Shown here: piece by piece, positions 882 through 59,159 of the stretch | Numbering within the stretch: position 1 is the first letter of the stretch | How the letters are laid out: each line of letters opens with the position of its first letter | DNA from: Euprymna scolopes | Taxonomy: Eukaryota | Reading direction: 5' to 3' (one strand) | NCBI GenBank assembly: GCA_053919585.1 | Contig: CM132818.1 | Length of the DNA: 64,000 nt | The notes under the pieces: model-generated | Databases searched by the model: none | The model's input: the letters and a program-made list of their open reading frames with translations, nothing else | Told to the model about the DNA's origin: nothing | Program-made: the position numbers and the translations under genes

Positions 882-911
882 GACCCTGGTTGAAAAACAT
901 CGATCCAAAAG
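882..911 (+). CDS. 30-nt internal phase-1/phase-1 exon, (G)PWLKNIDPK; probably the last exon of a long N-terminal region of a reticulon-like (RTN1/Rtnl1-type) gene
   Basis: Poly-T tract + AG at 880-881; AAG|GTGAGT donor at 912; length is a multiple of 3 and the frame is open. The peptide resembles, from memory, the segment just before the 'V-x-x-L-x-YWRD' RHD start in invertebrate reticulons (not verified by search). Confidence 0.7.
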
Positions 912-994
912 GTGAGTTATGCCATTCTTGTTCATTCTCTAAAAGTCTCATCCATTTCTTTCCAGCATTTTAATTACGTTTTATTTCTCCACAG

Positions 995-1017
995 ATTTCC
1001 ACAAACAGGAGCAATAA
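995..1017 (+). CDS. Candidate short alternative terminal exon (D)FHKQEQ* after an 83-nt intron
   Basis: ttttatttctccacAG acceptor at 993-994; in frame (phase 1) with exon 882-911; TAA at 1015-1017 overlaps AATAAA at 1013-1018. Confidence 0.45.
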
Positions 1018-2640
1018 AAGAGATCACTTAATAATCACGGGAAATTATTGATTTTGAAAAAGTCACTTTCAACTAAGCTCTTAAGTATTTTAATGAAATT
1101 TTTGTAATCAACAGCTACTTCTTTACAATCACACTGCCATGAAAATATTATTTAAATGTAATTGTTAACAAAAATGCTGTCAACATAAAAGGAAAAATTA
1201 ATCCAGTAAAAAATACATGGGAAAAGGGAGGTATTTACTATATAAAAATGATTTAAAATGTTTATCCAGTTTTTGACTATAACAAAATCAAGAGTCCATG
1301 CCATTTCTTAAATGGCTTTTTCCCCGTTGACTATAACATATTGCTGGTCCAGTGTAGTTCTAGGGGGTTCACTTTGCCAGCTTTTGCCAGGGTTAGTTTG
1401 TTGCTAATTGCCTGAGGCACCTCAGCCTAATTAAGCAGCCCAGACATTTTTGCAGGCCAGAGTGCTCCTTCTCTGGGGCACTGAATCTTCAATTTCACTT
1501 TCCCACCCAAGTATTACATCTTGCTATGGGAGAGAGATAAATACCCAAAACCTTTTTCTATTTCATAAACGGTCACTGTTTTAACTTATTTTATGCAAAA
1601 AAACAAAAAAAAACTTTTTCATTACTATTATTTGTGTTGTCATCTTGCATGTATCTCTGAGACTACAACAACACTCATTTCATGTTTGAGTGCATGAAAT
1701 CTGGATGGATATTAAGATTTTGAAGCACTCAAACATAAAAAATAGTGAGCATTTTGTGCTTCCATAGTATGCAAGGCAAACAACTGATACAAATAGAAAG
1801 TAAAGAAAACCAATTTTTTGTTATCAAAATAACGTATGAAGATTGTTATTGGAGTACCCTTCTCCTCCCCAAAAGCATTCGATTTAAAACCTGAAGCCCT
1901 TTTAATTTTCATGGTTGTGTGATTTGTGAAGAAGTGCAAAACATTGTTTTTTTTTTTATTTTTATAGAATCCATCTTTGGTTTGGAGGGGAAAAAACACC
2001 AGCAAACTTAAACTATAAATGTAAATTTAAATATACTTATCTAGTTTTATTAAACTTTTGATAAATGATTACAAGGCGTGTGAGTATCAAGTATAATTGT
2101 GCTGTGCAGGTAGGCAGACTTAGAATGTTTAAATTATAGTTGGCTTGCGTACTAACCTTAGATTATGACACATGTTCCAAACCTGCGCAGATAATACATA
2201 GTTACACACTACACAACTCTGTATGTATGTGTGTATGCATGTTTTTCTTTCTTTTTTGTTAAAAATGATTTTCTCCACACTGCAAAAGAAAACATTAAAT
2301 AGCCTCGTTGAAAATATAAATCTGTAAATTTTAGATGTTAATGTGATTTTTTAATATTTCCAACAGTCGTCTGTCTTTTTTCAAGAAATTTATTATTTGA
2401 TTAAAAAAAATAATAAATATTGAATACATTTTTTTTCTTTGTTTTTTAAATTATGAACAACTGTCTTTTGATAACACACTCAGGTTTATGTGTGTTTGGC
2501 AGCTTTTTATGTTTTAATTTTCTCCTTTTTATTAAGTCAATGTTAGCATGTTTATTATATTCTTATTAGAAATAAGTAATTTGTTCATAGTTAAAATGAG
2601 ATCTTTCTCAGTTGGTAAAACTGTACATATAGTAAACATG

Positions 2641-2699
<59 letters not shown>

Positions 2700-5224
2700 G
2701 GAAAGCAATTTCTAAAACTACTACACTAATTATTCTTAAATTTTAGAAATAAATTCTCTGCCTATGTAGCTAACCTGGGTGTTGTTTATAAAACTTTAAA
2801 TATATCAATGGAAATAAAAAAATTATTACATATTAAAAATCAGATTTTTGACATCAGACATAAATAGAATTACTTCTGCTAAATCTATATTTTATTTCGC
2901 TTACTCAGTGAAGTATGAATGTTTAAATTTGTGTTATTCACATAATATAAACAAAATTCTAATGTATTTTAGTGATTACATATTACATTCAGCCAGATTA
3001 TATCCTGTTACTACACAATAAACTCTATTTTAAAATTCATAAACTTTACACAATAAAAAATTCTAAATTATTTTATGATCTTTATTTTTTGCATAATGAA
3101 TACTGAATTCCAATTTATTTCATTAATTACATATTGTATTCGGCCAGATATATCCTTTAATAAGAACTACTTCATGATAAACACTATTATTTTTCTATAT
3201 TCATTAGCCAATCACATTGCTGTAACAGATAGAGCAATGTCATTATGTGTGTCTGTTATTTTTGCCCACAGAACATTTTCTTTGGAATACAGTTTCTTTA
3301 CAGAAAGAAGATCCTTTCATAGACTTATTATTTATGAATTATAAAATTACTAGCACGATCCATGGAAATACTACGAAATGAAAAATATATTTAATCAACA
3401 GATCTGTTTTGATAAAACTGATATTTTCCTGGATAGTGCAAAAAAAAAAAAAAGATTAGTATTTTGAGAGAAAAATCAACATGCAGCAAATATGAGTTTA
3501 TTAACATAGCTATGAAAATAGTCTCCATTGTATTTTAAATATAGAATCAACACAAATGGCGATTTAGTTTTAAACAAAATAACTTTGGATACAATAAAAG
3601 AAAATGTCTACAATAAATATAAGATTAGTTTGCATAACAAAAACACGAATACAGATAATACCTGGCAATGCTGTGTAGAAACAGCTAGTGAAATATTTTA
3701 AATCTTATTTTTTTTATGTTTAGATTATGAGGTTATTGTAGTAAAACAAATTTCTCTTTTAAATTTAACATTGGAAAAATCCTAAATATCTTTCAATTCA
3801 ATATCAATGTTTGAAACAAATGCTCTTATCTATAGATGAGCAGTAAAATACATTATTTTACTTTTATGTCATTTTAGACTTATTTCTATTAAACAAATTT
3901 AATCTGTTTGAAAGCAGTAGGCATTTAAATTTCAAAGGACATTTACTATTGACATTTAATCTGTTCATGAAAATTCAAAAATACTTAAAAAAAATTTTAT
4001 TATTAATTCTTTTTTACCCTTATAAATTGTTTAAATATTATAGACCTCATTATAAACCTGTCCTATAAGCAAATATTTACTTATTATAGTTTTAAAGATG
4101 ATCATAAAAATGACCATACTTAAATCTGTATTTGTGGGTTAAATTAAAGAATAGATTTTTTTTTTTATATTTGTCCTTCAGCTTGCAATCATGATCTTTC
4201 AAAAGTTTTTTTCTTACTCTGTACAGACTCACTTCCGCCTACTGTTTTGCATAGCAATGTATATTTGTGTCGATCAGGAATTTTGGATTGTAATGTGAGA
4301 AAGTTTCTAAACATAAGATTCTTGCTTAGAGGATTTTTGCCTGCTGAGTTAGAAAAAAAAAATGCTAAGAACTTTTCTTGGTAGTTCGTCTTCTTTTTTA
4401 CCTATTCTAACGAAAGCTTGATACACTGGCTTTGGTTTTTGAAGGATTGCGTGCAAGAAAAGGTCAAACTAAACCTTTTAGATGCACAGAAATTTAAAAC
4501 TTTAATTTTATTTGTTTAGAAGAAACAGATAGTGAGTGTTTTGTCTTGAAGTATTTTCGTTTGAAGATGAACAGATGCTAATTTAACCAATGAGTAAAGT
4601 TGATATATACAAGATGTGGCTTGGGAAGACTATGGTGAACTAGACCAGACATGATAAGTAATATATATATTAGTTGTACTTACCCAGTCCTTTAGTTTAA
4701 GAATAAATTATCTTTGTTAAAAGAAGTATTTTTTTTTTAAAAAAAAAAGGTATTTAATTGATTTACAATTAATTGATAAAAAAATTTTTTTTTTATTAAT
4801 TTGATTTTTAGCTGATTATCTAAAAATGATTCATATTCTGGGCCAGATGACTCATAAAGTTGTGTTTTTAATTGTAGCGAAGTATGTTATATTGTCAACT
4901 AACATTGATCGGAACAAAAGCATACACGTACAACTCTTATATAATAGATGCCTTGAGGAATTTTTCTTTGCTAATTATTATAGTACATGACATTGAAAAA
5001 CAAATATATTAACTTTGTGGGTATTTGTTTTGTAGTTTTTAACTTTTAACTGCATATACAAACACATGCATGCAGATCGCCCTTTATATAATAGAAGATA
5101 AAGATACTAGGGTACAGCAATAATATGTGCTAGTTAAAAAAGTTAAGTTTTATTTTTCAGCTTAAATACTATTTAGGTCTAATTTTTAAAATTAGATAAT
5201 TTTCTTTCTTTTTTTTTATATATT

Positions 5225-6765
5225 ATATTTTCATCCCAAACAAGGCACAGTGCCTCTTTGATGTAGGGGGTTACTATCTGGGACATAATTTGCAGGAATA
5301 CTATATAGAGGGTTGAGCAGCAAGATGTCTGTTTACATTACACTTGAACTTCTGCATGTCAGTACAGTCGGGGAAGCAGGATCCCACTAGGGAATTGTAA
5401 AGTCCAGCACTTCTGGGGAAGAAACTATCAGAGTAGAAGGCTTTCTGGCATCTGGGTATCTCTAGTGTGTAAGGGTGGGATTTTGCTGCTTGTCAGGTTT
5501 GGCGGAAGAATTTACATCAAGGGCATGTAGCTTGTCGGAGTATCTACCATTAAAATACTTGTAAAACAGGCAGAGGTATGCAACATTTCATCGATGGGAC
5601 AGCAGTTGAAGCCTAGCTGAGAGTTCAGGACCTATTAGGTTGGAAACTCTTTTAAACCCTGTCTAAGAGGAAGAGACTAGTAGCAGATGCACCAGCCCAA
5701 ATGTGACAACAATACTTCATATATGGACGAGTGGTAACCTTGTAGCGGTACAGAATACTCTCAGGTGCAAGTAAATTTCTAACATGGTAAAGAGAGCCCA
5801 CCTTCTTCACAGCAGCCTTGGCAATGCCTTCAATGTATCTGTTCCAACTCCTGTTCCTCATGAACATCAAGCAGAGGAGTTTGAGCAAAGTACTTTCACG
5901 TAATGTATCATTAGCCATAGCTATTGGTGGTTTAGAAGATTTCTTGTAGTTATTAAAGGAAAGGAGCTTAGTCTTGGCAGCATTAAATGTGACCAACCAT
6001 TTTTGTCCCCATTCCACTACAGACTGGAGGTCTTCCTATAGGGTTGATGCCATTGTCATGTGTTAATTAGTTTTTCCTCTTGTGCCTGTTATAGAGCGTG
6101 GTGTCGTCAGAAAATCTCAGAGACAATTTTATCAGGGAGATCATTTATGAATATTAGGAATAATAAAAATCCAAGGATCGACCCCTGAGGTACACCTGCA
6201 TTTATGTCATATTGTTTGGACGTATGACTATCCAGGACAACCTGGATTCTTCTCTTATTTAAGAAGGATTCAATTATGTTAAGTATTTGTCCAGTAATAC
6301 TATATGATCTAATTTTCCTGAGAAGACCATCATGCTATACCCTGTCAAAAGCCTTAGATATATCTAGGGCTACTGCCCTACCTTCTCCTGCTTTATCCAG
6401 TGCATGGTATATGTTTAAAGATTACAGTCAGGATATCTTCAGTAGAACGAGCTTGCCTAAATCCATATTGTTTGGTTGGACAGAAGTTTAGCAATAATAA
6501 GGTGGTGAACTAGAGCTTTAATTATTATCAAATATTTTAGCAAAAAGAGGAAGGTGGCTAATGGAGCAATAGTTTAATGGGTCAGTTCTTTTGCCAGAAT
6601 TCTTGTAAACTGGTACCACAGAAGCAGTGTTCTAGCAGTCAGGAAACAACATTTGTTGAAAAGTTTGGAGAGAACTGGAGTAACCTCAACTGAACATTTT
6701 AATAGTACAGCCAGGATGAGATCAGGTCGACATGTGTTTGAGGTGTTTAGGTTTTTTATGATGCT
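5225..6765 (-). mobile_element. 5'-truncated, degenerate CR1-like LINE (RT C-terminal half + 3'UTR)
   Basis: Minus-strand RT motifs LDISKAFDRV (~6340-6367), GVPQGSILG (~6171-6196), FSDDTTLY (~6091-6114), and ORF 5652-6017 'WGQKWLVTFNAAKTK...RPYMKYCCHIWAGA'; stops and frameshifts; 3' end matches the copies at 21625-21965 and 41621-42313. Confidence 0.9.
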
Positions 6766-8068
6766 ATATTGAAAATGTATGCGAAATTTGTTAAATGAAC
6801 AGTAAAGTGAAATGTTATATCAAAATGACGTTTCTAACTTATTTTATTGTGGTGAACCTTTCAAAGATTCTAAATTATACATAGCATAAGTTTTTCTTGA
6901 CTATAATTTGAGAGCGTATTTTATGAAATAATTTTTCTCAGGCTTATTAATGATTTCACTTATATTTTTTGACGGAAAGCTTGGTTTAATGAAATCAAGA
7001 AAAATTCCATTGGAAGTTCCATCCGATTACTTTCTCACTGAAAATTTATAGTATTCTTATGGAAGACTTGATAGATTTTATATAATAGATAAGTTTAAGT
7101 TTGAAGACATTGTTGTAAATTCTATTCTTTCTTTGGCATTGTTTTTAAAGAAAGCTAATTGGTTTGGAGCTAAAACTCATATACTCATAATAAACAATTT
7201 CTTGATTAGGAAAGAACGTTTTTAAAAGGTTTTAAATATCATAATTAAACCTTCCCCTATTTAATCTGCTAAATCATTATTCAATGAGAATGAAAGCACC
7301 AAACAATATATTAGCATTAATCCGTTGAATTGTTGACGAGATAACACTGCATCAGATTGTGTATAATGATAATGATAATTCTTTATGTACGTGTAAACTT
7401 GATGATGATGCTCATCCATCGCTTGTGAAAATGACCATGATCTTCTGCAATTGTACTTTTAAATTTCTGGTGGAATATCTTGCTTTTTACTTCATTTAAC
7501 ATGCTCATGTTCAGATATTGTTATTCTAGTGAATGAAACACTTTTGACAGGCTTAAACTTGTCTTGCTGAATCCATCCTCTAGAATAAATTCTTATTATG
7601 CTACTTGTGTGTCTCTAACAAACAAAGGCAGATGCATGGTTTGTCTAATTGATATCATTGCTGATTATGGAATTCAAATTCTATCGAGGATCAATTCTAG
7701 TCATTGCTCACTAACACTGTTGGGAAAAATATTAATCTGCACCCCCTCCCTTTCCTCAGAGTTATCATTAAAAATGACAAAGATTTATTGTATAATTAAA
7801 TGAACGTAATAATAGGCTATTTAATGCCAAAACAAAATGCCTGTCTTCTGGTTTAACATCATTACTTGTCCCAAAGTTTGGAAATTTTGGTAGCCTCTTT
7901 GAAAACATTTAGTCAAGGTGTTACATCCAGAGATAGATTTTTATCCGGGATGTAAGCTTCTTAATCGTCCCAAGATTAAATCTCTACTCATTTAACTTAA
8001 CCAAATTGCAAAGAAAAAAAAATTGCCAAATTTGAACATGTAAAACTGATGCATTATCAATCTATCAG

Positions 8069-8163
8069 TTGGTCAAAGATCATTGGCTGGTGATGTCTTT
8101 CAATGTCTTTTAAACCATTTAATGGATTTTCCACGTTTGCATAATGGAGGCTCATGCAGCTGA
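8069..8163 (+). CDS. Weak candidate phase-1 terminal exon GQRSLAGDVFQCLLNHLMDFPRLHNGGSCS*
   Basis: ACTGAT branch-like motif, then tctatcAG acceptor at 8067-8068; open phase-1 frame to TGA 8161-8163; GC-elevated island. Confidence 0.25.
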
Positions 8164-8854
8164 GGAGGGGGCAAATCTGAGTATGATCAACTCTGCTTGA
8201 GTCCGTCAGATGAAGAAGATCTGATATTGAAAGCATCCATTAGCTTAGCTTACGCACATCAGACAACTATTCAAAACTCACTACACTGTATTGTTAGAAT
8301 GCAATTAAATGTTCAAACTGTTTGAAATGTAACATTTTTTAAATGCTAAAATTGAAATTTAACGTTTAAACAAAAATGATTAATAAAGTTATACAAATGC
8401 ATTTTGTCAAAAAGCATAATAATGGCTATCCTAAAAAAAAATGATCGCTTCGAATGGGTGTATCTGTGATGTTCTGATGTTACGCTTAGCTATTTGCTTT
8501 GGATATTTTTGTCTGGCAACTTGCTCACCCTCACCAGTTTTCCTTGTGTTATGGCATCAGTAAGTCAACCCACTTAACAATGCAGCATTCAAATAGAAAA
8601 TATTGTCAAACTCGTTTTTTTTTTCTTTGTTTCTCATTACTGTCACTTCCTTTCCTCTTGGTCCTTTGATGTTCTCTATCAATTTAGTTTTTCAGTGAGC
8701 AATAATTGTTCATATACATTTAAAGTTTCATAGGTGTATAGTATAGATAAATACATAACGACATCTGTATTAATATATAGACTAGCTGAAACTGTAAATT
8801 ACACAATTTTATTTCCATTTTATCTGTATCTGTGTTGTCTTTATTATTTTTTTG

Positions 8855-10779: not shown

Positions 10780-11001
10780 TTTTTTATTGGCTTGTCTCGA
10801 ATATCACATCATGTAAGCTATGCTCTTATTGGTGGCTGCCTCTGACTCTTGCTGAAATGCAGCTGGGTTTATGTTTTCACCTGCATTCGAAATTTCCAAC
10901 ACAACTTTACCATTTGCCAGTCAGGCTCTGGTGGCAGAACACAGCACATAACTGCAGTTCTCAAATCTGCTGTTTGTCGACTGGCTAGCTGAACGAGTAA
11001 A
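10780..11001 (+). promoter_or_regulatory. Putative internal promoter / 5'UTR of the 11002 first exon
   Basis: Two ATTGG (reverse CCAAT) at 10786 and 10828; E-boxes CAGCTG (~10860) and CACCTG (~10878); in-frame TGA at 10990-10992 upstream of the ATG. Confidence 0.35.
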
Positions 11002-11872
11002 ATGGAAAATGCCAGTCAAGCAAGCTCTCGCATGCCTTACAGTGTAAGGAAGGAGAGACAACGACAAGCCAAACTAGCAGAAGAGGCTAAACTAGCAGCC
11101 AACAAAGAGGAGGGTCAGGTTGCAAAGAAAAGTGAAGATACCAAGGCTTACGTGGTTGAGGTTCAGATACCCGTGACACCAGAGCCTATAGTCTTGCAGA
11201 GCAAGTCCCCCTTCGAAGAATGTGCAGTGCTGAGCTTCAACCAACCTGCTGCTGTACCAGAGCCTGTCATAGATAATAGACCAGCACAGGCAGTAGACTC
11301 AGTTGAGACAGCCTTAGCTGAAGCGATACAAACCAGTGATCCAGAGCCTGTTGTCGTGAAGGAAGCCCTACCTGCAGAACCTGAGCCTGTTGAAGAAAAA
11401 CTGGTTACAAAAGTGGACTCTACTGTTGTGGAGGCCATACCATCTGCCCAAACAGAAACTGTAGCCATAACGACAGTATCGTCCATTCAGATCGAATCTG
11501 TGGCTGTGGAGGAACCATCACCCATTGTCCAGCCTGTAATCGTGCCCGTGGAAGCACCCCCACGTGTTCAGGCAGAACTCATCATGGCAGCTCCACCCGC
11601 CCAGACAGAACCCATAGCAGTAATGGATATCCCACCTGCCGAACCAGAAGTTGCTTTTGAGCAAGTGGAAAGCCCTGTCCAAGATGAAATTATTCAACCA
11701 ACCGTTAAGGATGAAGTTCTTGCTACTCCTATCATAAGCGAAGAAGTGATTTCTGCCTTACCTACTGTCGTAGCGGAAGAGTCAGCACCTTCTCCAAAGG
11801 TGGAAGAAGCCCCTCCTGCACCTGTTGAGGAAGAAAATATTGAACTTATACCTGCATCAGTTCGACAGAAAG
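11002..11872 (+). CDS. Alternative first coding exon, 290 aa acidic Pro/Glu/Val/Ala-rich low-complexity (likely disordered) N-terminus; probably a reticulon-like isoform N-terminus
   Basis: Long GC-elevated ORF; AAAATGG start with an upstream in-frame stop; composition drops to AT-rich intron right after AAAG|GTATTG (donor 11873), giving phase 1. The ORF-track tail to 11970 is intron read-through. Confidence 0.85.
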
Positions 11873-25756: not shown

Positions 25757-26620
25757 ACAAGGATCTCGAGCGCGTGGTTCAGTGGGGGAAGACATGGCCG
25801 GTTACCTTTAATGCATCTAAAACCAAACTCCTATCTTTACATCATCAACGCTCTGATCCCCATCTGACATCAATTGAAATGGATGGCTCTCGTCTAGGAG
25901 AAGCCCCATGCTTTGACAAGCTTCTGGGTTTGTCCTTTACTCCTGATCTGAAATGGAACACATACATCAAGTCTGTTGCCAAGGTCGCTGGAAAGATGGT
26001 GGGATCCTTCTACCGCTTCAGAAGATATCTCACTACTGATGCAATTCTCTATCTATATAAAAGCCAAGTACGTCCAAGGATGGAATACTGTTGCCACATC
26101 TGGGCAGGAGCTGCTAAAAACAGCCTATCCTGCTTTGACAGAGTACAAAATAGACTTCGTGGCTTAGTGGGGATGCTCTTTTCTCTACCCTGCAACCTCT
26201 CTCCCACAGAAAAGACGTTGCGAGCCTATCCTTGTTTATCGTTATTTCCATGGCAGGTGCTCATCTGAACTCCAATCTCTGGTCCTCCCTCGCCAATCCT
26301 TCACGAAAAACACCCGTCTAGCTGAATCCACTGTGAAAAATTTCCCCCACTCTTTATCTGTGCCTTAATCAAAACGTAGATTCCATGAACAAAGCTTCTT
26401 TTTTAGAACTGCACGCCTGTGGAACTGTTCCGTCTGCCTGCTTCCCACCTGACTACAACTTGGATGTCTTCAAGTCTAATGTTAACAAATTCCTAATGAA
26501 CCGCTCTCTTAAGTAAACACTTCATTAAATCTCCACACTAACGTACTGTACTTGCAATAACCCTTATCCCTGAGTGGCTTCCGGGCCTTAATAAGTGGTG
26601 ACCCCATGTAAAAAAAAAAA
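25757..26620 (+). mobile_element. 5'-truncated CR1-like LINE (second, younger-looking subfamily) with poly(A) tail
   Basis: ORF 25774-26268 'WGKTWPVTFNASKTK...LYKSQVRPRMEYCCHIWAGA'; CpG-rich; 3'UTR and A-run at 26610-26620. Confidence 0.9.
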
Positions 26621-29037
26621 GAGTACAAATAAAACAAGATTCTATCCAAACTTTCTAGACATCCTCTGGGTCTAGTTTTATCCAAAACTCGTAACAACTT
26701 AGATTATTGATACAATTTAAATTGAAAAATAACTTTGATCAATTTAAATTAATGTTTAAACAAAAAAAAACAAAAACAATTGGTACTCCCTTCCCTTCTC
26801 CCTGAATGTTATTCACATGATGTATGCAGATTGGTTTTCTTTTCTTGAGTCTTGTAAAGTTGATAGCATCATATTTTTCTCCACGTTCCATGCCTGTGTG
26901 ATTTCATTTGTAATGAAGTGTTATGAAAACTAATACCTATTGCCATAAGTCATCTATCAGATGTGAAGATAACATCTGTTAAGATCAGAAGTTTCTGTTC
27001 AACTAAGATTAATTGGTTAAAGTTTCTTTTAACATCAATCATTTGCCATTAAGTGTGTGCTTCAGACTACAAACTGGATTGTGTTCGTATCTCATAAATC
27101 TTTCATCTACTTAATTCTATGGTTCTTGACTTGTTTCAGATCCTGTACCACTAAGCTTACGTTTAAAAAATAAATGTTGTGGTCAATAGCATTTTTAATC
27201 AGGATAAATTGAGCATACATTGCAGATGTTTGGGCTTAAAAAAAACAGGATTTTTAAAATTAATTTTAAATATCCAACTAATATTCTGATCTTTAAATCT
27301 TTTTTTTTTTTATAACTGTAATGTTGTTGCAACAGTGTTGACCATCGCCAGATTGAGTTTGCTTATTCCTTGGCCTGTGCCATGTCCTGAACTACATCGA
27401 CCCACGCATGGCACTCCTGAATAAGGTTGCAAATTTGAATTACATGAATATTTATACATTATTTTACTGTAAAATATAAAATAGAAAACAAAATAAAAAT
27501 GAATTCATTCAATAAATGAAAGTTGATAAACTAGGAGGAGCGTGTGTGGCGAAAAGTCTCATTATTTAAAGAATTAGAGTTTAATCTCTGTACTGGCAGT
27601 ATATTTTCATTAGATCTTCAATCACAAGTAAATTTTAATGCTATAGAGTTGAGACCAGCTGTAGCAAAATGTTAATTTTTTTGAAAAAATAATTTTCAAT
27701 TATTTTTTCAAAAGTGCACCAATCTCTGTTTTGTTAAACATCTTATGGTCCATAAAGCAACAGTCTAGAACTGCTTTGTTTTTAGAATTTTTAAAGCTGT
27801 GTCAACTACTTTTCTTCATTTCGATGTTTGCCGCATTTACCCACATTCTTTGTCTCCTTTCATTCTTGTTTATCTGTCCATTGAATTATGTTAATTGATG
27901 TTTGCTGTATGCAATTTCTGGAGTCTGTCCAATTCACATGCTAATTTAAGCCTTTTTTTTTCTTTCACTTGGTTTACATTATCTCTGGCCAAAGTCAATG
28001 GTGGCATGTCCCTTGCTGATTGCCATAAATGATACATAAAAGCAACTGACTCCTTGTCATATGTAGATTAAATATTACACAACTACATTTTCATGAGTTC
28101 TTTCCTTTGACTTCTGAAAAAGATATTTCAAAACCAATGTAGATGCGGCTCCTCAATCAAGTCTATGGCAACCCATCTAAGAGAATGAAACTAATGCAAA
28201 ACCTGTGATTAAAGTGATTAGTATACCTTGGTATGTCGCCAGGTTATAATCATGGCAACTCTGAGGATGGTACTCACGTTGTACAAGTATTTATCACTAG
28301 AATCCAATTATGTATAAATTTGTCTGCAATCTCACCTGTCATCCAAATATATTAAAAGTTCTATGCTGATGAAAAGAGGATTACATGTCTAGATATAATC
28401 TATTAGGGACACAGTTACAATTCTGGCCGATATCAAACTATACAGATCTGAAACTGGTCTAAAAAGCCATCTATGAAATCAGACGAGGAAAGGATGACAG
28501 AAATGTGATGAGATGGCAATGACCTATGAAAATGCATCAAATGTTACGTATTAATTGATAACATATGCAATTGTTAGGATACATGATTACATTTGTGTAT
28601 TAATCTTAGATTTAGAAGCGTTTTTATATTTCAGATTTCAAGAGAATCTGATAGTTCTGAACTGTACAAATTATTTTTAATTCTTGGAGAGATTCTACTA
28701 AACAGCTTTTAAAGAATTACTCATCTGATATTTCAAGATGTTTAAGAAATAGTTTCAATTTGGTAAGTTATTTAGAGCATTTGCATTCAAAATTTAAATG
28801 ACACCTCCATGTTACGCAAAGTTTGCGTTAATGTAAGTACCCTGTGCCTTTTTCGGTGCATGGAACGGGATTTAAGATATCACAGTTCTATTGAAGCCCC
28901 CTTACCTTTGAGAATGCTACTGCAATCATATTGGCCCTGGCCTTATTTAATTGATGTCATGGGGTTAGATGCTGTGAGGAGCTACCACCTGCTAGTTACT
29001 AATTTAAAGATTCTTTTAATAAAAACAGTAAAAACAA

Positions 29038-29187
29038 NNNNNNNNNNNNNNNNNNNNNNNNNNNNNNNNNNNNNNNNNNNNNNNNNNNNNNNNNNNNNNN
29101 NNNNNNNNNNNNNNNNNNNNNNNNNNNNNNNNNNNNNNNNNNNNNNNNNNNNNNNNNNNNNNNNNNNNNNNNNNNNNNNNNNNNNNN
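29038..29187. other. Assembly gap (150 N), followed by (TG)n
   Basis: Run of N. Confidence 1.
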
Positions 29188-29199
29188 TTTTTCTGCTTT

Positions 29200-29233
<34 letters not shown>

Positions 29234-35575: not shown

Positions 35576-35599
35576 GTCAGGCCACATGATGATGATAGG

Positions 35600-35669
35600 C
35601 TATGCGCGCACACACACACACTTGCTCTGTCTATATCTATCTGTACTTATATTTACCTCTCTCTATTTA

Positions 35670-35708
<39 letters not shown>

Positions 35709-36045
35709 CTCTTGCTCTTTCTTTCTCTTTTTCTTACTGTGTCTTTCTCTATGTGTGTCTCTCTTTCTGTGTGTGTGTGTGTGTGTGTGTCTCTCTCTCT
35801 CTGTCTTTCTCTCTGTGTGTGTCTCTCTCTGTCTTCCTCTGTGTGTGTGCGTCTCTCTCTGTCTTTTTTTTTTGTGTATGTGTGTGTGTGTGTGTGCGCC
35901 TCTGTCTTTCTTTCTGTGTATCTCTCTCTGTCTTTCTTTATATGTGTGTCTATGTCTATATGTATGTGCCTCTCTCTCTGTGTATCTCTGTCTGTAGATT
36001 TCTATCTTTGTCTCTGTAGCTCTCTATCTTTCTCTCTGTGGCTCT

Positions 36046-36094
<49 letters not shown>

Positions 36095-36125
36095 GTATGT
36101 GTGTGTTTTTCTCTCTGTCTCTAAT
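35600..36125. repeat. Compound microsatellite (CA/TA/CT/GT)
   Basis: Direct reading. Other microsatellites at ~2641-2696, 33795-33860, 34875-34910, 50546-50586, 50950-50990 (AAT), 51431-51460 and 58051-58094. Confidence 0.95.
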
Positions 36126-38938
36126 TGGTTAGGTGACTTGTATACAATCCTCTGATTAATTCATTGCATATAATTTTCCATATACATTTTCTTATTGATT
36201 ATTGTTCCATTCTGAAGACATTGAATGAACATTGCCTTCATTCTATGGAGTTCCACTTATATATAAAAAAAATCTATTGAAGAATCAGGTTGTCGATGAA
36301 TTATGAATAGAAAAAAAAAAGTAATGTGTTAACACAATGACATAAAAGATGGTTAAAAATGATAAAAAGAAAACAATTTGACAATCATTTCACAAGAATG
36401 AAACTTTCGAATTACAAAGTAAAATTCGTAGATCTTTCTTTTTCGCTCAAGACATCCATATTTTCATTTATTCTATTTTTTAGAATTTGCTCTTTATTAC
36501 GAGATTAGCATCGTTCATGTGATGCACTCATTTCCATACAAAGATATAATGTAAGTGGTTGATGACCTGAACAGAAAATTTTCATGTGCCAAGTTCGAAT
36601 CCAATTTGTTCCACAGAAACACTTTCATCAAACTCATACTTGACCTTGTGTCTCACCTCTTGGAAAGGAGGTAAATGAAATAACTAGGTTATTTCTTTTT
36701 TTTTTGTTGTTGTTTTTTTTTTTTAATGTGTAGTCATCTACAGGCAACTGTTTTGCTGTATCATGGCTACAGTGTAGTAAGACTAGATTTGAAACTAACT
36801 AATATCTTAGTCAGTAGTCTGGATATATTGCCCCTACTCTTTTAGGCTTCCCACAAAATTAAGAGAATTTATTTGTTTACATTACCAACCACCAGGGAGC
36901 TCTACTTTACAAAGAGCAATGTATCTTGTATACTTAGGTAGCACTCAATCTGTCAAGCATATTCTGTTGAATTTGAAATCTTGTGTCAATTAGATCTACT
37001 GGTCTCGCTTGCTAAAATTTGAACAAGCTTTTATAAGTCAGAGTGTAAAATAAAAATACACCCCCCTCCCAAGTCAGATTGAAGATTATTCTGTATTTCT
37101 TTATAAGTATGTTTTACATTTTTTCCTGAATAATTAAAAATTAGTCCAAAGTTTGAGAAATTAAATTTGGTAGTATTTTGAAAAGAATGATCAACACATG
37201 TAATAATACACCGAATATTTATGATCAACAAAATCTGTAGAAAGATGAGCATGCTATATGTTGGATATTGGGTATTATCTTGCTCAACTTCATTATCAAT
37301 GATGCCATTACCATTCATCAATGATAAAGAGTGGCATTAATTGCTGACAAGCTTTGTGAGTTTAAAGATCTTTATGGCATGAACGAGCTTGCCAAGGTGT
37401 AAAACAAACTGACATTTTGTGGTCAGCGAAAAAGTGTTGGCTCTACACACTTCACCAGGACTTGAAAATCGCCATTATACACCTTGATCAGGCACATGAT
37501 CAAAAGAAATAAATGAATAAAATCTGATATAATGCAGGACCACACAACAAAGAAAAAATATCAAAAATATCTGAGAAACATAAATGAAACAAATATATTT
37601 ATATTTTTAGATTTTATTTTTTATTCGTTGGAAAATATGTAATGTTTGTTAAAAAGAAAATTTTCATTGTGTTGAAATTTAGTTTCAAGTTCAACCATGA
37701 TGGAAGTCTTCATTAAATATCAAATTATATTAATATTTTTTGTGAATGCAGGAAAATATTCTGAGTTATTCAGATTTAAGAAGACTAAAGAATGGTGTGC
37801 GTGCCAGCCAAAGTACTCACTACACCAGATTTCTCTAGTTGTCCTGTTTTGTATTTCAACTCGACTGCAAGTAATCCTATTACTTTGAGTGTAACCGAAA
37901 CAATTACAATGATTTAATCTAACCATGTCTGTTAATAAGATGTTACAGAATTCAATCTAGTAACATAAAATCCAAGCAAGGATCGATGGAGTAGCCTTTT
38001 TATGTTAAAGCTAATTATCTTGTTTAAGTTTATTTTTGGAACAAGGTTCCACTTGGATGTGTGCACATATTAGTGTGTGTGTGTGATTATTTGTAAGGCA
38101 TTTGAATCTTAACATGTTTGATTGATTGATCAGCTCTTGATCTTGTTCTCAATCTGAATCCTTCTGCCAAACAAATCTGGGTCACTTGAAAGTTAGCGTT
38201 TTATTTGACTCAAACCCATTCTATTGTATTTGTCTATAAAGCTTGTTTACATCATCATAATTTTGTAATTTCAACTTTCTTTCTATTGACTAATAAATCG
38301 TTCAATTGTTTCAATCAATTTATCAAGTGAATTAAAGGTTCTTTTTAAAATATCTTTGGTGAAGGAGGAAGATGTTTAACACTTAATAAGACAATCAAAT
38401 TTTATTAATATATACAATTATTAAAATATTGGTGGCTTGTGTGGACTCCCAAAATATTTAATTAACTGATTTGACTCCGAACTTACACATAGAAATCAAA
38501 AATCAGTTGTGTTTTTTTAATCAATCTTCAAGTGGGATGTTTTCTTTTCCTAGCGGTCAATTTCATCGCTCTGTAGTTTAAAGTTAGAAATCAACTTTTG
38601 CAAGAGTTGGATATTTTAAAACCTACTCTAGAAAAAATAAATAAGATTTATCTTGGATACAAAAATATCCAGCAAAATTCAAATTTTTATATATATATTT
38701 CCTTATTTTGTTAAAACATAATAATTGTGTTCAAGAGGTTAATACATATTTTCCAAAATGATGGATTAACTCTACAAAGTATGCATATAGTTGCAAAAGT
38801 TTCTATGAAATATAATTTAATAACATTACTGAGTCACTCTGAAAATAAGCTAATTCTGATTATTTTTATTTATTTTTTAAGATTTTTTAGAATGACAACT
38901 TTATTCAGGAATAGCAGATTCTATTTTTGGACATATAA

Positions 38939-39479: not shown

Positions 39480-39975
39480 ATCCAATGAGAACCCACAAAT
39501 CTAAAGAATGATTGCTTTGCACCTCGTTCTTAATTCTCTGCCTCGATTACATGCATCACACGGTGTCTCAGTTTGCCACTTTGCTACAGGCTAGCAGCTA
39601 ATCTCCTCCTGCCTGGGTTTCTTGTGTATAGTCTTCATGGTTGCGAGAATTTCCAGTTGACATTTCTTGAATTAGTTGGAATATTATCCAAAGGTATTAA
39701 TTATAATGCCACTACTTGGATTTTGTCCTTCTAACGTCTGAATCAGTGCCTGCATATTGGAGGAAATCAGAGTATTAAGATCTGAAACCTCTTGGCCAGA
39801 TCAGTGTCACATTGACTGACGGAATGACTGTGCATACATTGTGATATGTCAAGCTTCACTTCTTTCACTGGGATTATTACAAAGTCTGAGTTTCAATGAC
39901 TTGTTTGTTCTGATGAACATTTTTGTCAGCATTATTTCTTTATTCTTTTTTGCCTCAAACTAAGCATTTATTGAG
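39480..39975 (+). promoter_or_regulatory. Putative internal promoter and non-coding first exon for the 40067 isoform
   Basis: CCAAT at 39482, Inr-like TCAGTT at 39568-39573, GC-elevated stretch, GAG|GTATAA donor at 39976 with acceptors at 40044 or 40060. Confidence 0.35.
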
Positions 39976-40066: not shown

Positions 40067-40154
40067 ATGGCTTCAGAAACATCAGAAATTTTTAAAACCG
40101 AAGTTGTTATATCTTCACCAGCTTTAATAGACTTGAACTGGGTCAAAGAGCAAG
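40067..40154 (+). CDS. Short alternative first coding exon MASETSEIFKTEVVISSPALIDLNWVKEQ, phase 1; resembles RTN1-C/RTN4-C-type short N-termini
   Basis: AAAAATGG start; CAAG|GTATGA donor at 40155; 88 nt = 29 codons + 1. NWVKEQ| parallels vertebrate RTN1-C NWKSQ| and RTN4-C NWKDK| before the RHD. Confidence 0.7.
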
Positions 40155-41620
40155 GTATGAATTTTTATATTTTTTATTTAGTTTTCATCTTAACCCACCT
40201 TTCCCTTCTCACTCACAAATTTTAATTCATTTTTTTTTTACTTTTATGCTTTCATTTATATCTTACTATTCTTATCTTTATACTTTTCTATGTAATTCTT
40301 ATTTCTCTTATCCTTGATACCCCAGTTTTTGTGATCCATTCATATACATCAATTGGTCATAAATTTTTTATAAATGTTTGTGTGTTCCACATATTCAACA
40401 TTAGTCAACTGGATGATAGACTTTAGAATATGCTAGTGTTTTTAACCGCTTTTAAATCATCTGTGGACTTAAAACTGGGTGTTTAAAATTTCCTATAATG
40501 GCCTATCTACATGAATGTAAAAATCCTGTTCAAAATCTAAAGTGTATCTCTGTGTACCCCCACCCCCACTATTTCTTGTATTTATACAACACTACAGATT
40601 TGAATGACCAGTGTCTAAGATGAATATGCAGTAACTTTTTTTTTGTTTTTTTGCTTGAGTAAATATCTGGATTAGCTTGATATTTTCATTATATTTTTAA
40701 AATATGACTTTTTTTCATTCAATTCTAAACAACTTTATAAAATCGATAAAAAATGTAAAAAAATTAAAGTGATTACTAAAATCAATGACAAGTATGTTTT
40801 TTTAATGCATCCTAACAAAGTTCAATTTTCTATGTTTAGACATAATTACAAAGATAAACTTTATTAAAGTAGAGTGAGGTTTCTTTTGTTAAACCATAAC
40901 AATGAAATAGGAAATTTAATGGATTTTTTTAAATTTATAAATCACTTTTCTTGATTAAACTGATTTGCTTATTACAACTAGTTGACTTATTTTCATCAAA
41001 TGTCCGGTTAATCTTGCTAACAATTACTGTATTAATCTATTCATGATTTCAAAACCTATTGTTCAATTGCTTGGTCGTGTTTTCGTCTATGAAATGAACT
41101 TTATAGATTTCTATACCCAACAATTTGAAAGTCCATAGGCTTCAGAAGAAGACTTAACCAACTTTATTGCATCTAATTTTTCTTGCACATCTATTCATTT
41201 TTTAAGATGTTTTTTTTTAATAGGATTTTCAACAATAAATTTGTGCCTTTTAACACTTTGTACAATTTTTTTTTTTTTTTAGTTTTGAACTTTTATCGAT
41301 TATTAAATGATTTGTGGTCTACAGAATTTTAACTTTGAAAAAATGCAAGATAAACATTGTTATATATTGAGTTAAAACATCAAAATTGATGGACAAATAG
41401 AAGAAACAAGATTGCAATCTCAATAAATATTTGTTAAATAAAAAGAAAATTTTATTATATGTAGTTAAAATTATTTTTCTTATTCAGGAGGGCCCAAATA
41501 TTACATAACAAATCGGTCCCATGATGATATGCATGTTAGTTTTTTTTTGTTTTTTTTTTAAATTATTATTTATGCCAAAATATCTTATTCAGGGTGCGAG
41601 TAAAGAAATTGAAAAGAAAT

Positions 41621-42313
41621 GAAAGTACTTTGTTCAAACTCCTTGGCTTAACATTCATGGGGAACATGAGTTGAAACAGATACATTGAGGGCATTGCTAA
41701 GGCTGCTGCAAAGAAGGTGGTCTCTCTCTCTCTACTGCGCTAGAAAGTTACTTACGCCTAAAAGTATCTTGGACCTCTACAATGTCACCATTCACCTATG
41801 GTTGGAGCATTGTTGCCACATTTGGGCCGGTGCATCTGCTACTTGTCTCTTACTCTGGGACAGGGTTCAAAAGAGAGTCGCCAACCTGATAGGTCCACAC
41901 TATCAACTAGGCTTCAACATCGATAAAATGTTGCATCCCTCTGCCTGGTTTACAACTATTTTAATGGTGGATGCTCCGACAAACTACAAGCCCTTGGTGC
42001 CCTCTTGACGTAAATACCCCGACAAACTCGGCAAGCAGCAAAATCCCACCCCCAGACAGTAGAAATTCCTAGATGTAAGAAAGCTTTCTACTGTAATAGT
42101 TTCTTCCCTAGGACTGCTAGACTTTGGAATTCCCTTCCAGCTCCCTGCTTCCCTGACTGTACTGACATGCAGAAGTTCAAGTGCAATGTAAACAGACATC
42201 GTGTTGCTCAACTCCCTACATAGTATCCCTGCAACTTATGTCCCAGATAGTAGCCGCTTACATCAAAGTGGGACTCTGCTTTGTTTGGAGTGAAAATGCA
42301 ATAAAAAAAAAAA
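41621..42313 (+). mobile_element. 5'-truncated CR1-like LINE, same family as 5225-6765 but opposite orientation
   Basis: HCCHIWAGASATCLLLWDRVQKR peptide; colinear with the reverse complement of 5225-5900; poly(A) at 42303-42313. Confidence 0.9.
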
Positions 42314-45707: not shown

Positions 45708-45836
45708 NNNNNNNNNNNNNNNNNNNNNNNNNNNNNNNNNNNNNNNNNNNNNNNNNNNNNNNNNNNNNNNNNNNNNNNNNNNNNNNNNNNNNNNNNNNNN
45801 NNNNNNNNNNNNNNNNNNNNNNNNNNNNNNNNNNNN
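45708..45836. other. Assembly gap (129 N)
   Basis: Run of N. Confidence 1.
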
Positions 45837-49401: not shown

Positions 49402-49452
49402 AAGATGCTGAACCCGAAGTTACTTTACGGGACATACCCGGCTTGAGTACGA
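49402..49452 (+). CDS. 51-nt phase-1/phase-1 exon (E)DAEPEVTLRDIPGLST
   Basis: GCTGAT branch-like motif, ttttctactgttcAG acceptor, GTAAGT donor at 49453; open frame; CpG-rich compared with flanks. Confidence 0.75.
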
Positions 49453-51422: not shown

Positions 51423-51467
<45 letters not shown>

Positions 51468-51868: not shown

Positions 51869-51904
<36 letters not shown>

Positions 51905-54129: not shown

Positions 54130-54180
54130 ATAAACTTGATGGATTCGCAGGAAACGATAAGTTGCAACCTGATGTGAAAG
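54130..54180 (+). CDS. 51-nt phase-1/phase-1 exon (D)KLDGFAGNDKLQPDVK
   Basis: Strong AAG|GTATGT donor at 54181; an in-frame TAA upstream forces the AAG acceptor at 54127-54129; open frame. Confidence 0.6.
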
Positions 54181-57100: not shown

Positions 57101-57858
57101 CTCAAGATAACTAAAGTTAAGTAACAATGAAGATTTCATTGGATGTAAATAATTAAACAAGAAAACATTAATTCTAATGTGATTGCATCTTTGTAACAAT
57201 ATAATTTTTATAAGATTGTATGATGGCAATTGAGTTGCGCTTGAATACGGCAACTTCTTGGACAAATAAATATGTTGTCTGTATTTTCACTATTTCTGCA
57301 TTCATCTGAAGTATTGTTTTGTTGTGTCATGGCTTTTCAGTATGGCTAGACATAATGAGTGTTTCAAGAAGAGATTCCAAACCTAATTTTTTGGTCAAAA
57401 GGAAAATTCTTAATGTTTGTTACCTTTGCATTACTGTTCATTTTTTAAGGAGTACTATGGGAGCTCAACCCAAAGTTGGGGGCGAATATATATGTAGTTA
57501 AAAATTTTAACAATCTGCTAAAAAACGAAAGAAATAGAACTGCAAAATATCAAAGTGCTTAATGCACTGTAGAGCCAATATAAATACAAATATTTATTTG
57601 AACTTAGACTTTGCAAACAAGGATTGTCAGGTAAAGTTTACGTACCAATCTTCATTTGGTGAGACCCCAGATAGTAAACTGCTTATTTATTTCAAAATAT
57701 TTAATCTTTAAAAGTAATTGATATTGCCCTTTAATTCCAAGGTCATCTTTACTCTTACTATTATTATTATTTTAATTTTTTTTTTTTCAAGCTTTTTAAT
57801 TAAATTTCTTTCCTGGAAAGCATACAGTCCCTTCTATTCTTTTCCTAAATAGTTGTTG

Positions 57859-57889
<31 letters not shown>

Positions 57890-58050
57890 AATCAATTCTA
57901 TGATTTTGATTTGTTTATTCCATGCTATACCTCATCCAATACTTTTTATCTGTTTGATTTTTAATATGCTGCTCTTTTTCATGGTTGGCTTTATTTCCTT
58001 TCTCTTAGCTCTTTTCCATATGTCTTCCCACTTTTGTAATTTCCCTCTTG

Positions 58051-58094
<44 letters not shown>

Positions 58095-59030
58095 TTCTGT
58101 TTGTTTGATTTTTGTCCAGTGTTTTTTTTATGTATCTGCAGCTGCTTTCAATTAAAAAAAAAATATTTAGCTTATTAGATTTTCCGCTGTAATTTTGTGT
58201 GATATTTTTAGTGACAGGTGTAACTTGTTTCAGAGGCTGGGAAAAATCTGACTCTTGACTTCCAGAATCGTTTTAGAAAATCTGATTCCAGACTCTTCCA
58301 AAAATTGCATTAACATAATGAAGTGTGTTATTCATTTTTCGCTTTAATTTGCGTAAGTTGGAATTTTTAAAAGATTGATCAATGGATTAAATAGACATAG
58401 TGTTTAGCATTTTCAACAAAACCTGTTTGAATGCTGACAAAATAAATAGAAGTTTGGAGATGGTCAGCCAGACTCTGGTACATTTCTCTCCAAACAGATC
58501 TACATAAGCTTTATCACAGATATTGAGCACTCTTTTATATACAGATACTAATAATACAACTGTATATCATATCAATATCTGCTTAGAACATATCGAAAAA
58601 TTGTGTGAAAGCTTAAAATGACTATCATGAGAAGTTGAAGTATCATGTATATCCATTTCTAAATGTACACTCTACAAAGAATATGAAGCACTCTGTATAG
58701 ATATGATTAAGTTTTGTTTTTTTCATTCCTCTTGATAGAGTCTCTTATGTTTTGGGTTTTATCATTCTAACATTTTATACTTCTTCCAATTCTTGCCCAT
58801 TTCTGGGGTTTTATTTCATTTTCTTATTTTAGCATTTCTCATACTTGATTTTCTTTCTGGGCAGTTCTTGCTGCTTATTTCCAAGCTAACCAGTAGCTAC
58901 TTTGACTTTTCTTCCAAAATCTGTTATTTCACTCATTTCCAATCCTGTATATTCCCCCCTTCCATTATTTTTTAGTCAACTTCCAGAATTATTTTTCTTA
59001 AAAAAAAAAATATGGTTCTTTTTTTATAAG

Positions 59031-59159
59031 CCTTAAGCGACTTAGATGATGACTTAGATGAATATTTACGCAAGGAATTGTACAGACATTTACACGGACA
59101 TTTAGACACTTACTTAGAGGACGGCTTTTTGGAATTTACCGGTGCTGAATATTATGAGT
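59031..59159 (+). CDS. 129-nt phase-1/phase-1 exon LSDLDDDLDEYLRKELYRHLHGHLDTYLEDGFLEFTGAEYYE
   Basis: ttctttttttataAG acceptor, GTAAGT donor at 59160, 43 codons open, coding-like composition. Confidence 0.7.

What the first reader, a model, noticed from the sequence alone, without database searches (positions are those of the whole stretch)
882..59159. Modular phase-1 exon array: several alternative N-termini plus interchangeable cassette exons of one gene, probably a reticulon
Seen: almost every well-supported exon across 58 kb ends in phase 1, and the internal ones are frame-preserving (30, 51, 51, 129 nt; weaker 135, 69, 111 nt), so they could be combined freely. Two exons start with a good ATG context (11002, 40067). 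Known: reticulon genes (vertebrate RTN1/RTN4, Drosophila Rtnl1) use alternative promoters to put variable N-termini on a shared RHD. Inferred: NIDPK|, SVRQK| and NWVKEQ| are three alternative lead-ins to an RHD exon downstream of the window. The additional short cassettes would be an unusually rich, possibly lineage-specific isoform repertoire, mostly invisible to the ORF track.
Basis: partly seen in the sequence, partly recalled or inferred. Interest (0 to 1): 0.75.

Follow-up and report, generated by a model that had tools for sequence, protein, structure and literature searches.

The report
Cephalopod reticulon gene, alternative N-terminal exons
The window lies inside one huge intron of an ordinary reticulon (ER-shaping protein) gene and holds a micro-exon, an alternative first exon and two optional cassette exons that all splice in the same reading phase onto the shared reticulon domain, an arrangement already annotated in octopus and other molluscs.

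Summary
The gene is a reticulon.

**Shared domain exon.** The first reticulon-domain (RHD) exon lies 44 kb past the window end, on the same strand. Its phase-1 acceptor encodes (V)LDLIYWRD, as predicted.

**Four window exons are real:**
- The 30-nt micro-exon 882-911 is joined exon1-microexon-RHD in two RNA contigs that match this genome 100%.
- The ATG exon 11002-11872 is joined to the RHD in transcripts of related cephalopods, and 19 small runs of this organism hold it in full.
- The 51-nt cassette 49402-49452 is orthologous to cassettes in a relative's transcript and in Octopus bimaculoides reticulon-1-A.
- The 129-nt cassette 59031-59159 matches the acidic cassette of Octopus isoform X2.

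**Junction residues.** The predicted junction residues (V, I, F, E) match those relatives.

**A further first exon.** It encodes MEARVKA and lies 17 kb beyond the window.

**Not supported:**
- A second 51-nt exon and the 135/69/111-nt candidates have no support.

**Not lineage-specific.** The repertoire is not unusually rich. RefSeq lists up to 15 isoforms for mollusc orthologues.

**Gaps.** Both assembly gaps lie in introns.

The parts
882..911 (+). 30-nt micro-exon (phase 1 in, phase 1 out) encoding (G)PWLKNIDPK. It is exon 2 of the canonical reticulon isoform.
   Evidence: RNA contigs L020 and L021 from two runs are 100% identical to the genome and join L009:1379-1792, window 882-911 and RHD exon 108241-108449. 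GPWLKNIDPK is identical in P0006, P0007 and P0009.
10891..11001 (+). 5' untranslated part of the alternative first exon (exon B). The transcription start is at or upstream of about 10890.
   Evidence: The 5'UTR of a relative's mRNA (L022:13-101) aligns to 10891-10976 at 81%. There is an in-frame TGA upstream of the ATG and a good ATG context.
11002..11872 (+). Coding part of alternative first exon B: 290 aa, P/E/V-rich, probably disordered, ending ...SVRQK + G (phase 1).
   Evidence: Homologous N-termini are joined directly to VLDLIYWRD in P0004, P0005 and P0133, and through the cassette in P0127. All sampled words are held in 19 runs from 8 studies, whose contig totals (14-135 Mb in 18 of them, 1411 Mb in X14) are mostly far too small to be assemblies of a 5.9-Gb genome.
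49402..49452 (+). 51-nt cassette exon (phase 1-1) encoding (E)DAEPEVTLRDIPGLST. Its last base A gives Ile with the RHD exon.
   Evidence: P0127 has ...GLK-EDAEPEITLQDFPT-I-LDLIYWRD. Smith-Waterman score is 58 against 27 for the next best over 110 kb in six frames. BLASTP gives 1e-6 and nucleotide identity to L022 is 85%. Octopus X4 has EQEPEVSVKDLHGYRL-I. GC is 0.52 against about 0.28 around it.
59031..59159 (+). 129-nt acidic cassette exon (phase 1-1) encoding LSDLDDDLDEYLRKELYRHLHGHLDTYLEDGFLEFTGAEYYE. Its last base T gives Phe with the RHD exon.
   Evidence: It is homologous to the cassette of Octopus bimaculoides reticulon-1-A isoform X2 (P0134...LRRELYRGLRGELEHYLEE...AVYYD-F-LDLIYWRD). 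Smith-Waterman score is 75 against 36 for the next best of 7342 segments. BLASTP gives 5e-6 and tblastn 3e-4. It is single copy in the genome. The order after the 51-nt cassette and the junction Phe are the same as in Octopus.
40067..40154 (+). Candidate ATG first exon 'C' (MASETSEIFKTEVVISSPALIDLNWVKEQ + G, phase 1). UNVERIFIED, and possibly a chance ORF.
   Evidence: The sequence is single copy. Its ATG context and donor are good, but about one such site per strand is expected by chance. GC is 0.34 and the codon score is neutral. There is no Pfam match.
29038..29187 (.). Assembly gap 1, inside the intron.
   Evidence: The ORF 28809-29249 that crosses it is an artefact of the N run. No exon lies nearby.
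45708..45836 (.). Assembly gap 2, inside the intron.
   Evidence: It lies 3.5 kb upstream of the 51-nt cassette and 5.5 kb downstream of candidate exon C.

Best explanation
The window (contig C36:12524001-12588000, + strand, of a 5.9-Gb cephalopod-type genome) lies inside a single reticulon gene of at least 220 kb.

**Layout**
- The canonical ATG exon is 91 kb upstream of the window (C36:12432763-12433054).
- It splices to the micro-exon at 882-911.
- A 107-kb phase-1 intron follows, ending at the first RHD exon (C36:12632241-12632449, window-equivalent 108241-108449).
- Nested in that intron are two internal promoters with their own ATG first exons: exon B at 11002-11872, and exon D at window-equivalent 81000-81021, outside the window.
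- Also nested there are two symmetric cassettes of 51 nt (49402) and 129 nt (59031).

**Why any combination stays in frame**
- Every upstream exon ends one base into a codon, and the RHD exon begins with the remaining two bases (TT).
- Only the junction residue changes: G/A/T + TT gives V/I/F. Entering the cassettes, N + AA gives E or K and N + CC gives A or T.

**Result**
- A set of isoforms shares the membrane-shaping RHD and a KxKxx C-terminus.
- The isoforms differ in disordered cytosolic N-terminal modules.

**Shown versus inferred**
- Shown in this species: exon1 to micro-exon to RHD, as RNA contigs.
- Shown in relatives: B to RHD, B to 51 to RHD, D to RHD, micro to 51 to RHD, and micro to 51 to 129 to RHD.
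- Inferred: that this species uses the same combinations, and that choice is by tissue-specific promoter use and cassette inclusion, as in vertebrate RTN genes.
For: - **RHD exons downstream.** They lie on the same strand at 95% identity to P0004's RHD, with acceptor ccttacag|TTTTGGATCTCATATACTGG in phase 1.
- **Pfam.** Reticulon PF02453 scores 150 bits on P0009, starting exactly at the junction residue 108, and 55 bits on the genomic exon alone.
- **Topology.** Two hydrophobic segments of about 35 aa are separated by a loop of about 64 aa, and the C-terminus is KAKAQ.
- **RNA contigs.** L020 and L021 are 100% identical to the genome across exon1, 882-911 and four further exons, the RHD exons among them.
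- **Exon B.** Its homologues are fused to the RHD in P0004, P0005, P0127 and P0133, its 5'UTR is conserved, and it is held whole in 19 small runs.
- **Cassettes.**
- **Exon D.** The 5'UTR of three metatranscriptome contigs maps colinearly at about 79% to 80621-81009, and the genome reads ATGGAAGCCAGAGTAAAAGCAG|gtaggg.
- **Junction residues.** The predicted E, I, F and V equal those seen in P0127, P0010 and P0134.
- **Octopus isoforms.** X3, X4, X5 and P0129 show two cassettes used together, singly or not at all.
Against: - There are no junction reads from this species for exon B, the 51-nt cassette or the 129-nt cassette. Their use here therefore rests on orthology and on k-mer presence in runs that the tool only guesses to be RNA.
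- The Octopus isoforms are RefSeq models, not experimentally characterised proteins.
- The two assembly gaps could hide further small exons.
- Candidate exon C and the weaker cassettes are unsupported.
Confidence: 0.9

Rival explanations
1. Candidate exon C (40067-40154) is a genuine additional, lineage-specific first exon driven by a promoter near the GC-richer island at 39535-39648. This would give a further short N-terminus (MASETSE...NWVKEQ-V-LDLIYWRD).
For: It has a good ATG context, a 29-codon open frame and a strong donor AAG|gtatga in phase 1 ending in G, like the verified lead-ins. It is single copy. A possible non-coding exon and donor lie at about 39694, and an acceptor-like ttgtcag lies just before the ATG region. 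It is the only such site on the + strand under strict criteria.
Against: The - strand gives three independent sites of the same quality by chance, one of them in phase 1. GC is 0.34 and the codon score is neutral, unlike the verified 51-nt cassette and exon B. No relative carries it among the reticulon isoforms collected. The exhaustive search returned only a bacterial repeat protein. No read evidence could be obtained.
Confidence: 0.17
2. Exon B (11002-11872) is a separate gene nested in the reticulon intron, as the Acanthosepion pharaonis annotation treats it ('unnamed protein product'), and not a reticulon N-terminus.
For: P0001 and P0131 are annotated as stand-alone proteins in A. pharaonis, next to RTN1. 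The ORF reads on past the donor for 32 codons.
Against: Transcript-derived proteins from three sources join the homologous sequence exactly at ...K| to VLDLIYWRD or to the cassette (P0004, P0005, P0127, P0133). Similarity between species stops at the donor and the read-through tails differ.
Confidence: 0.03
3. Apart from the conserved exons, the 'array' is largely chance. The second 51-nt exon and the 135-, 69- and 111-nt candidates are open AG...GT segments of an AT-rich intron.
For: Candidates of similar quality occur on the non-coding strand. Acceptors are poor or composition is intron-like. None matches any mollusc reticulon isoform. One 135-nt candidate lies in a microsatellite-like stretch.
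Against: Rarely used or species-specific micro-exons cannot be excluded without reads. 54130-54180 has a good donor and the highest codon score of the untested set.
Confidence: 0.8

Closest known systems
Octopus bimaculoides reticulon-1-A, RefSeq isoforms X2-X5 (isoform names for P0134, P0130, P0010 and P0011; accessions given there for X3-X5: XP_052827638.1, XP_052827639.1, XP_052827640.1)
   Same: The layout is the same: MAD... first exon, then the GPWLK(N/K)IDPK micro-exon, then optional cassettes, then (V/I/F)LDLIYWRD and the RHD. The E(D/Q)(A/E)PEV... cassette and the acidic LR(K/R)ELYR...YY(E/D) cassette are orthologous, in the same order and with the same junction residues (E, I, F). 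RHD identity is about 85-90%.
   Different: Octopus has a further 39-nt cassette (DVGASNEELDNSL) for which I found no counterpart in the 110 kb examined. The acidic cassette is 43 aa here and about 52 aa in Octopus. No octopus counterpart of exon B or exon D appeared in my searches, which were limited by length and word sharing, so absence is not shown.
Acanthosepion (Sepia) pharaonis RTN1 (CAE1312689.1) with neighbouring 'unnamed protein products' CAE1312687.1 and CAE1312688.1
   Same: It is the same gene in a cuttlefish. The exon-B homologue is 47% identical and the RHD is on the same contig. Transcript P0133 joins them.
   Different: There the exon-B ORF is annotated as a separate gene and the RTN1 model is truncated. 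Here the evidence places all of it in one gene.
Vertebrate RTN1, RTN3 and RTN4/Nogo
   Same: A common C-terminal RHD carries N-termini that differ in length and sequence, produced by differential promoters and alternative splicing (review PMC8125174). Short isoforms of the Nogo-C/RTN1-C type resemble the exon-D isoform (from my own knowledge).
   Different: The N-terminal exons are not homologous. I did not test whether vertebrate genes share the phase-1 hub.
Reticulon-1-A-like genes of other molluscs (Ostrea edulis up to X15, Littorina saxatilis up to X14, Crassostrea, Mytilus, Haliotis)
   Same: The WLKNVDPR micro-exon directly precedes the RHD. Optional inserts sit between it and (V/L/M/F)L(D/E)LIYWRD, and the junction residue changes as expected for a phase-1 hub.
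   Different: The insert sequences are not recognisably homologous to the cephalopod cassettes.

Membership tests
Reticulon family (RTN/RTNL, Pfam PF02453) | C-terminal reticulon homology domain scoring above the curated threshold | tested here: met
   P0009, a transcript-derived protein identical to this genome's exons, scores 150.3 bits against a cut-off of 31.8, covering profile positions 1-156 of 157. The genomic RHD exon 1 alone scores 55 bits.
Reticulon family (RTN/RTNL, Pfam PF02453) | Two long (about 30-40 aa) hydrophobic hairpin segments separated by a hydrophilic loop of about 60-70 aa | tested here: met
   A Kyte-Doolittle scan of P0009 gives hydrophobic stretches at about 121-157 and 222-256, with a loop of about 64 aa between them.
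Reticulon family (RTN/RTNL, Pfam PF02453) | Variable N-termini placed on common RHD exons by alternative promoters or splicing | tested here: met
   Canonical isoform in this species. Exon-B, exon-B+cassette and exon-D isoforms in relatives. Family property as stated in PMC8125174.
Reticulon family (RTN/RTNL, Pfam PF02453) | ER membrane localisation and tubule shaping | not testable with these tools
   Only the C-terminal KAKAQ (KxKxx-type retrieval signal, established knowledge) can be read from the sequence.
Orthologue of Octopus bimaculoides reticulon-1-A | Same exon order, homologous cassettes and same junction codons | tested here: met
   P0009 is the best decapodiform-type match to P0130 together with P0006 (70% identity over the full length).
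Orthologue of Octopus bimaculoides reticulon-1-A | Single-copy locus (no paralogue that could confuse the assignment) | tested here: inconclusive
   The own-genome search with the RHD found only this locus at E below 0.05, and other hits have E above 1. However, the tool scores only the best candidates, exon by exon.

The most novel reading that the evidence does not exclude
The 43-aa acidic cassette (59031-59159) has been conserved since the octopus/decapodiform split. At its splice junction with the RHD exon it creates a conserved Y-[E/D]-F-L motif preceded by acidic residues (AEYYE-F-LDL here, AVYYD-F-LDL in Octopus). This could be an isoform-specific LC3-interacting (LIR-type) or similar short linear motif, making the cassette-bearing isoform an ER-phagy receptor in the manner of vertebrate RTN3L. 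The idea rests only on reading the sequences and on my own knowledge of LIR motifs. Nothing here tests it.
Probability: 0.07. Interest if true: 0.45.

Novelty: already known. Interest (0 to 1): 0.15.

Why it matters
Mostly as annotation. The analysis shows that in this large cephalopod genome one reticulon gene spans more than 220 kb. It also shows that an ORF which another cuttlefish annotation treats as a separate gene is in fact an alternative reticulon N-terminus. Several tiny exons (22, 30, 51 and 129 nt) that ORF-based tracks miss are real. The phase-1 hub explains how mollusc reticulon genes generate many N-terminal variants without touching the membrane-shaping domain. None of this is surprising for the reticulon family, and it opens no long-standing question.

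Tried and rejected
2. **The look-up of encoding contigs** for P0010 found no record. For P0003, P0131 and P0001 it returned places without DNA, so the orthologous introns of other cephalopods could not be compared.
3. **The metagenome scan** with a 25-nt RHD pattern returned only an unrelated, GC-rich reticulon transcript, L023.
4. **The exhaustive protein search** with the exon-C peptide returned only P0169, a bacterial beta-propeller repeat protein. It matched through three copies of FKTG..SSPALADLNGDG, which I read as chance.
5. **The codon-usage log-odds score** had too little power. The verified micro-exon ranks at the 74th percentile and untested candidates at the 84th-94th.
6. **P0126 N-terminus.** I first read its MEANIKT as read-through of the RHD acceptor. 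Mapping its 5'UTR to 80621-81009 showed it is a real first exon, so I withdrew that idea. The Octopus 'MST' start of P0008 may still be such an artefact.
7. **The alignment** used wrong locus coordinates and is void.
8. **Apparent matches to other molluscs' inserts** at 8200-8229 and 41139-41165 lack usable splice sites or the right phase.
9. **The search of earlier findings** had nothing for this place or for 'reticulon'.
10. **Spliced models.** Exons were searched one by one by reference, and the joined step was left out.


Full report
**What the window is**

The window is AT-rich (about 30% G+C) eukaryotic DNA. It is contig C36:12524001-12588000, + strand, of a 5.9-Gb assembly. The closest proteins are cephalopod proteins, from Octopus bimaculoides and Acanthosepion pharaonis.

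**The gaps first**

- The N runs are at 29038-29187 and 45708-45836.
- No exon discussed here touches them. The nearest are the candidate exon at 40067-40154 and the cassette at 49402-49452.
- The only ORFs crossing them are artefacts of the N runs.
- A relative's mRNA (L022) joins the homologue of exon 11002-11872, which lies before both gaps, to the homologue of cassette 49402-49452, which lies after both gaps, and then to the RHD. Order and orientation across the gaps are therefore consistent with a real transcript.
Small exons hidden in them cannot be excluded.

**Identity of the gene**

- The 290-aa ATG exon (11002-11871) has no Pfam match. The word search found five homologues.
- Three are ORF-like read-throughs from other cephalopod assemblies.
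- Two (P0004, P0005) carry Pfam Reticulon. In them the homologous region ends ...AAIGLK and continues directly VLDLIYWRDVKKTG....
- A search of the window's own genome with that RHD found four exons on the same strand of the same contig, the first at 95% identity.
- The first RHD exon has the acceptor ccttacag|TT TTG GAT CTC ATA TAC TGG AGA GAT.
- Pfam PF02453 scores 150 bits on P0009 and 55 bits on the genomic exon alone. The domain begins at the junction residue.
- P0009 has the two long hydrophobic segments, a loop of about 64 aa and a KAKAQ C-terminus.

**The micro-exon, 882-911**

- GPWLKNIDPK is identical in P0006, P0007 and P0009.
- P0009's N-terminus is encoded 91 kb upstream of the window (L009:1501-1792).
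- Two Logan RNA contigs from different runs (L020, L021) are 100% identical to the genome.
- Their pieces are L009:1379-1792, window 882-911, 108241-108449, L002:1503-1641, L003:1517-1590 and L004:1508-1569.
- This is direct transcript evidence from the same organism for both borders of the 30-nt exon.
- The exon is therefore exon 2 of the canonical isoform, not an N-terminus of its own.
- The intron that follows it is 107 kb long and contains everything else in the finding.

**Exon B, 11002-11872**

- Transcript-derived proteins of three origins join its homologue to the RHD:
  - P0004, P0005 and P0127 come from ocean metatranscriptomes.
  - P0133 belongs to the cluster of A. pharaonis proteins.
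- L022's 5'UTR aligns to 10891-10976 at 81%.
- An in-frame TGA precedes the ATG.
- All sampled words of the exon are present in 19 runs from 8 studies of 'organism A'. Contig totals are 14-135 Mb in 18 of them (1411 Mb in X14), mostly far too small to be assemblies of a 5.9-Gb genome. The tool's label 'RNA?' is a guess, so I count this as good but not conclusive evidence of expression here.

**The 51-nt cassette, 49402-49452**

- It encodes (E)DAEPEVTLRDIPGLST and ends with A.
- P0127 reads ...GLK-EDAEPEITLQDFPT-I-LDLIYWRD.
- Octopus X4 reads ...IDPK-EQEPEVSVKDLHGYRL-I-LDLIYWRD.
- P0127's insert scores 58 at this place, against 27 for the next best over 110 kb in six frames.
- Pairwise BLASTP gives 1e-6, and nucleotide identity to L022 is 85%.
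- The cassette is joined to exon B in one relative and to the micro-exon in Octopus.

**The 129-nt cassette, 59031-59159**

- Octopus isoform X2 (P0134) carries, after the first cassette...LNDDLRRELYRGLRGELEHYLEE...AVYYD-F-LDLIYWRD.
- The window exon reads ...LDEYLRKELYRHLHGHLDTYLED...AEYYE and ends in T, which gives TTT = Phe with the RHD exon.
- The Smith-Waterman score is 75, against 36 for the next best of 7342 segments.
- BLASTP gives 5e-6.
- The sequence is single copy.

**A further first exon, outside the window**

- P0126 (MEANIKT-V-LDLIYWRD) is carried by three contigs.
- Its 5'UTR maps colinearly at about 79% to window-equivalent 80621-81009.
- There the genome reads ATG GAA GCC AGA GTA AAA GCA G|gtaggg. 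That is MEARVKA, 22 coding nt, phase 1, ending in G.

**How it works**

- Exon 1, the micro-exon, exon B and exon D all end one base into a codon, with G.
- The cassettes are multiples of three and end with A or T.
- The RHD exon supplies TT. Every combination therefore stays in frame, and only the junction residue changes to V, I or F.
- Entering the cassettes, the junction residue is E or K for the 51-nt cassette and A or T for the 129-nt cassette.
- Octopus X3, X4, X5 and P0129 show two cassettes used together, singly or not at all.
- I infer that promoter choice and cassette inclusion are tissue-regulated, as described for vertebrate RTN genes (PMC8125174).

**What is not supported**

- *Candidate exon C (40067-40154).*
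  - It is single copy and well formed.
  - The opposite strand yields three independent sites of equal quality by chance.
  - Its composition is intron-like.
  - No reticulon isoform carries it.
  - The exhaustive search returned only a bacterial repeat protein.
I worked beside those places afterwards.
- *The other candidates.* A second 51-nt exon and the 135/69/111-nt candidates have no support.

**Novelty**

- The repertoire is not unusual. RefSeq names isoforms up to X15 in Ostrea edulis and X14 in Littorina saxatilis. The same insertion point between WLKNVDPR and the RHD is used across molluscs.
- The two cassettes are shared with Octopus, so they are old, not lineage-specific.
- The arrangement is a known property of reticulon genes. 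Here it is documented for one more genome.

I filled no gaps.

Noticed in passing
L009:1501-3261 (C36:12432763-12434523), 91 kb upstream of the window: The canonical first exon's reading frame stays open for 586 codons beyond the donor used in the RNA contigs (L009:1792). The extension is very acidic and His-rich. Further donor-like sites in phase 1 occur at L009:1891 and 3142, the latter ending in G like the other lead-ins. A long, Nogo-A-like isoform made by an alternative 5' splice site is possible.
   Followed up: partly
window-equivalent 80621-81021 (C36:12604621-12605021; L013): This is an alternative first exon D (MEARVKA, phase 1) with a 5'UTR conserved at about 79% with transcripts of a related cephalopod. 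GC-richer islands lie at 80467-80924.
   Followed up: yes
window 5652-6017 (-), 25774-26268 (+), 41685-42008 (+): These are three copies of one intronic ORF family (WG.KW.VTFNA.KTKLLS...CCHIWAGA). Two of them are 48% identical (E = 9e-37). There is no Pfam match. From memory they look like the C-terminal part of non-LTR retrotransposon reverse transcriptases.
   Followed up: partly
window 60400-62650: This is a GC-richer block (0.42) with several overlapping ORFs on both strands and no significant Pfam hit. It is probably a decayed retroelement in the intron.
   Followed up: no
window 35586-36155: A microsatellite-like TC/TG/TA-rich stretch produces long spurious ORFs and one of the 135-nt 'phase 1-1' candidates (35998-36132).
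   Followed up: partly
L020:864-906: 43 nt of the RNA contig, between the pieces in L003 and L004, were not located in the loci I fetched. A small RHD exon between C36:12649520 and 12653307 remains unplaced.
   Followed up: no
P0001, P0131, P0128 (Acanthosepion pharaonis CAE1312687-9): The public cuttlefish annotation splits the exon-B homologue off as 'unnamed protein product' genes and truncates RTN1. Transcript P0133 shows they belong to one gene.
   Followed up: partly
window 40091-40138: The peptide FKTEVVISSPALIDLN of candidate exon C resembles the repeat unit FKTG..SSPALADLNGDG of a bacterial beta-propeller protein (P0169, 75% over 16 aa, three repeats). I take this as chance.
   Followed up: yes
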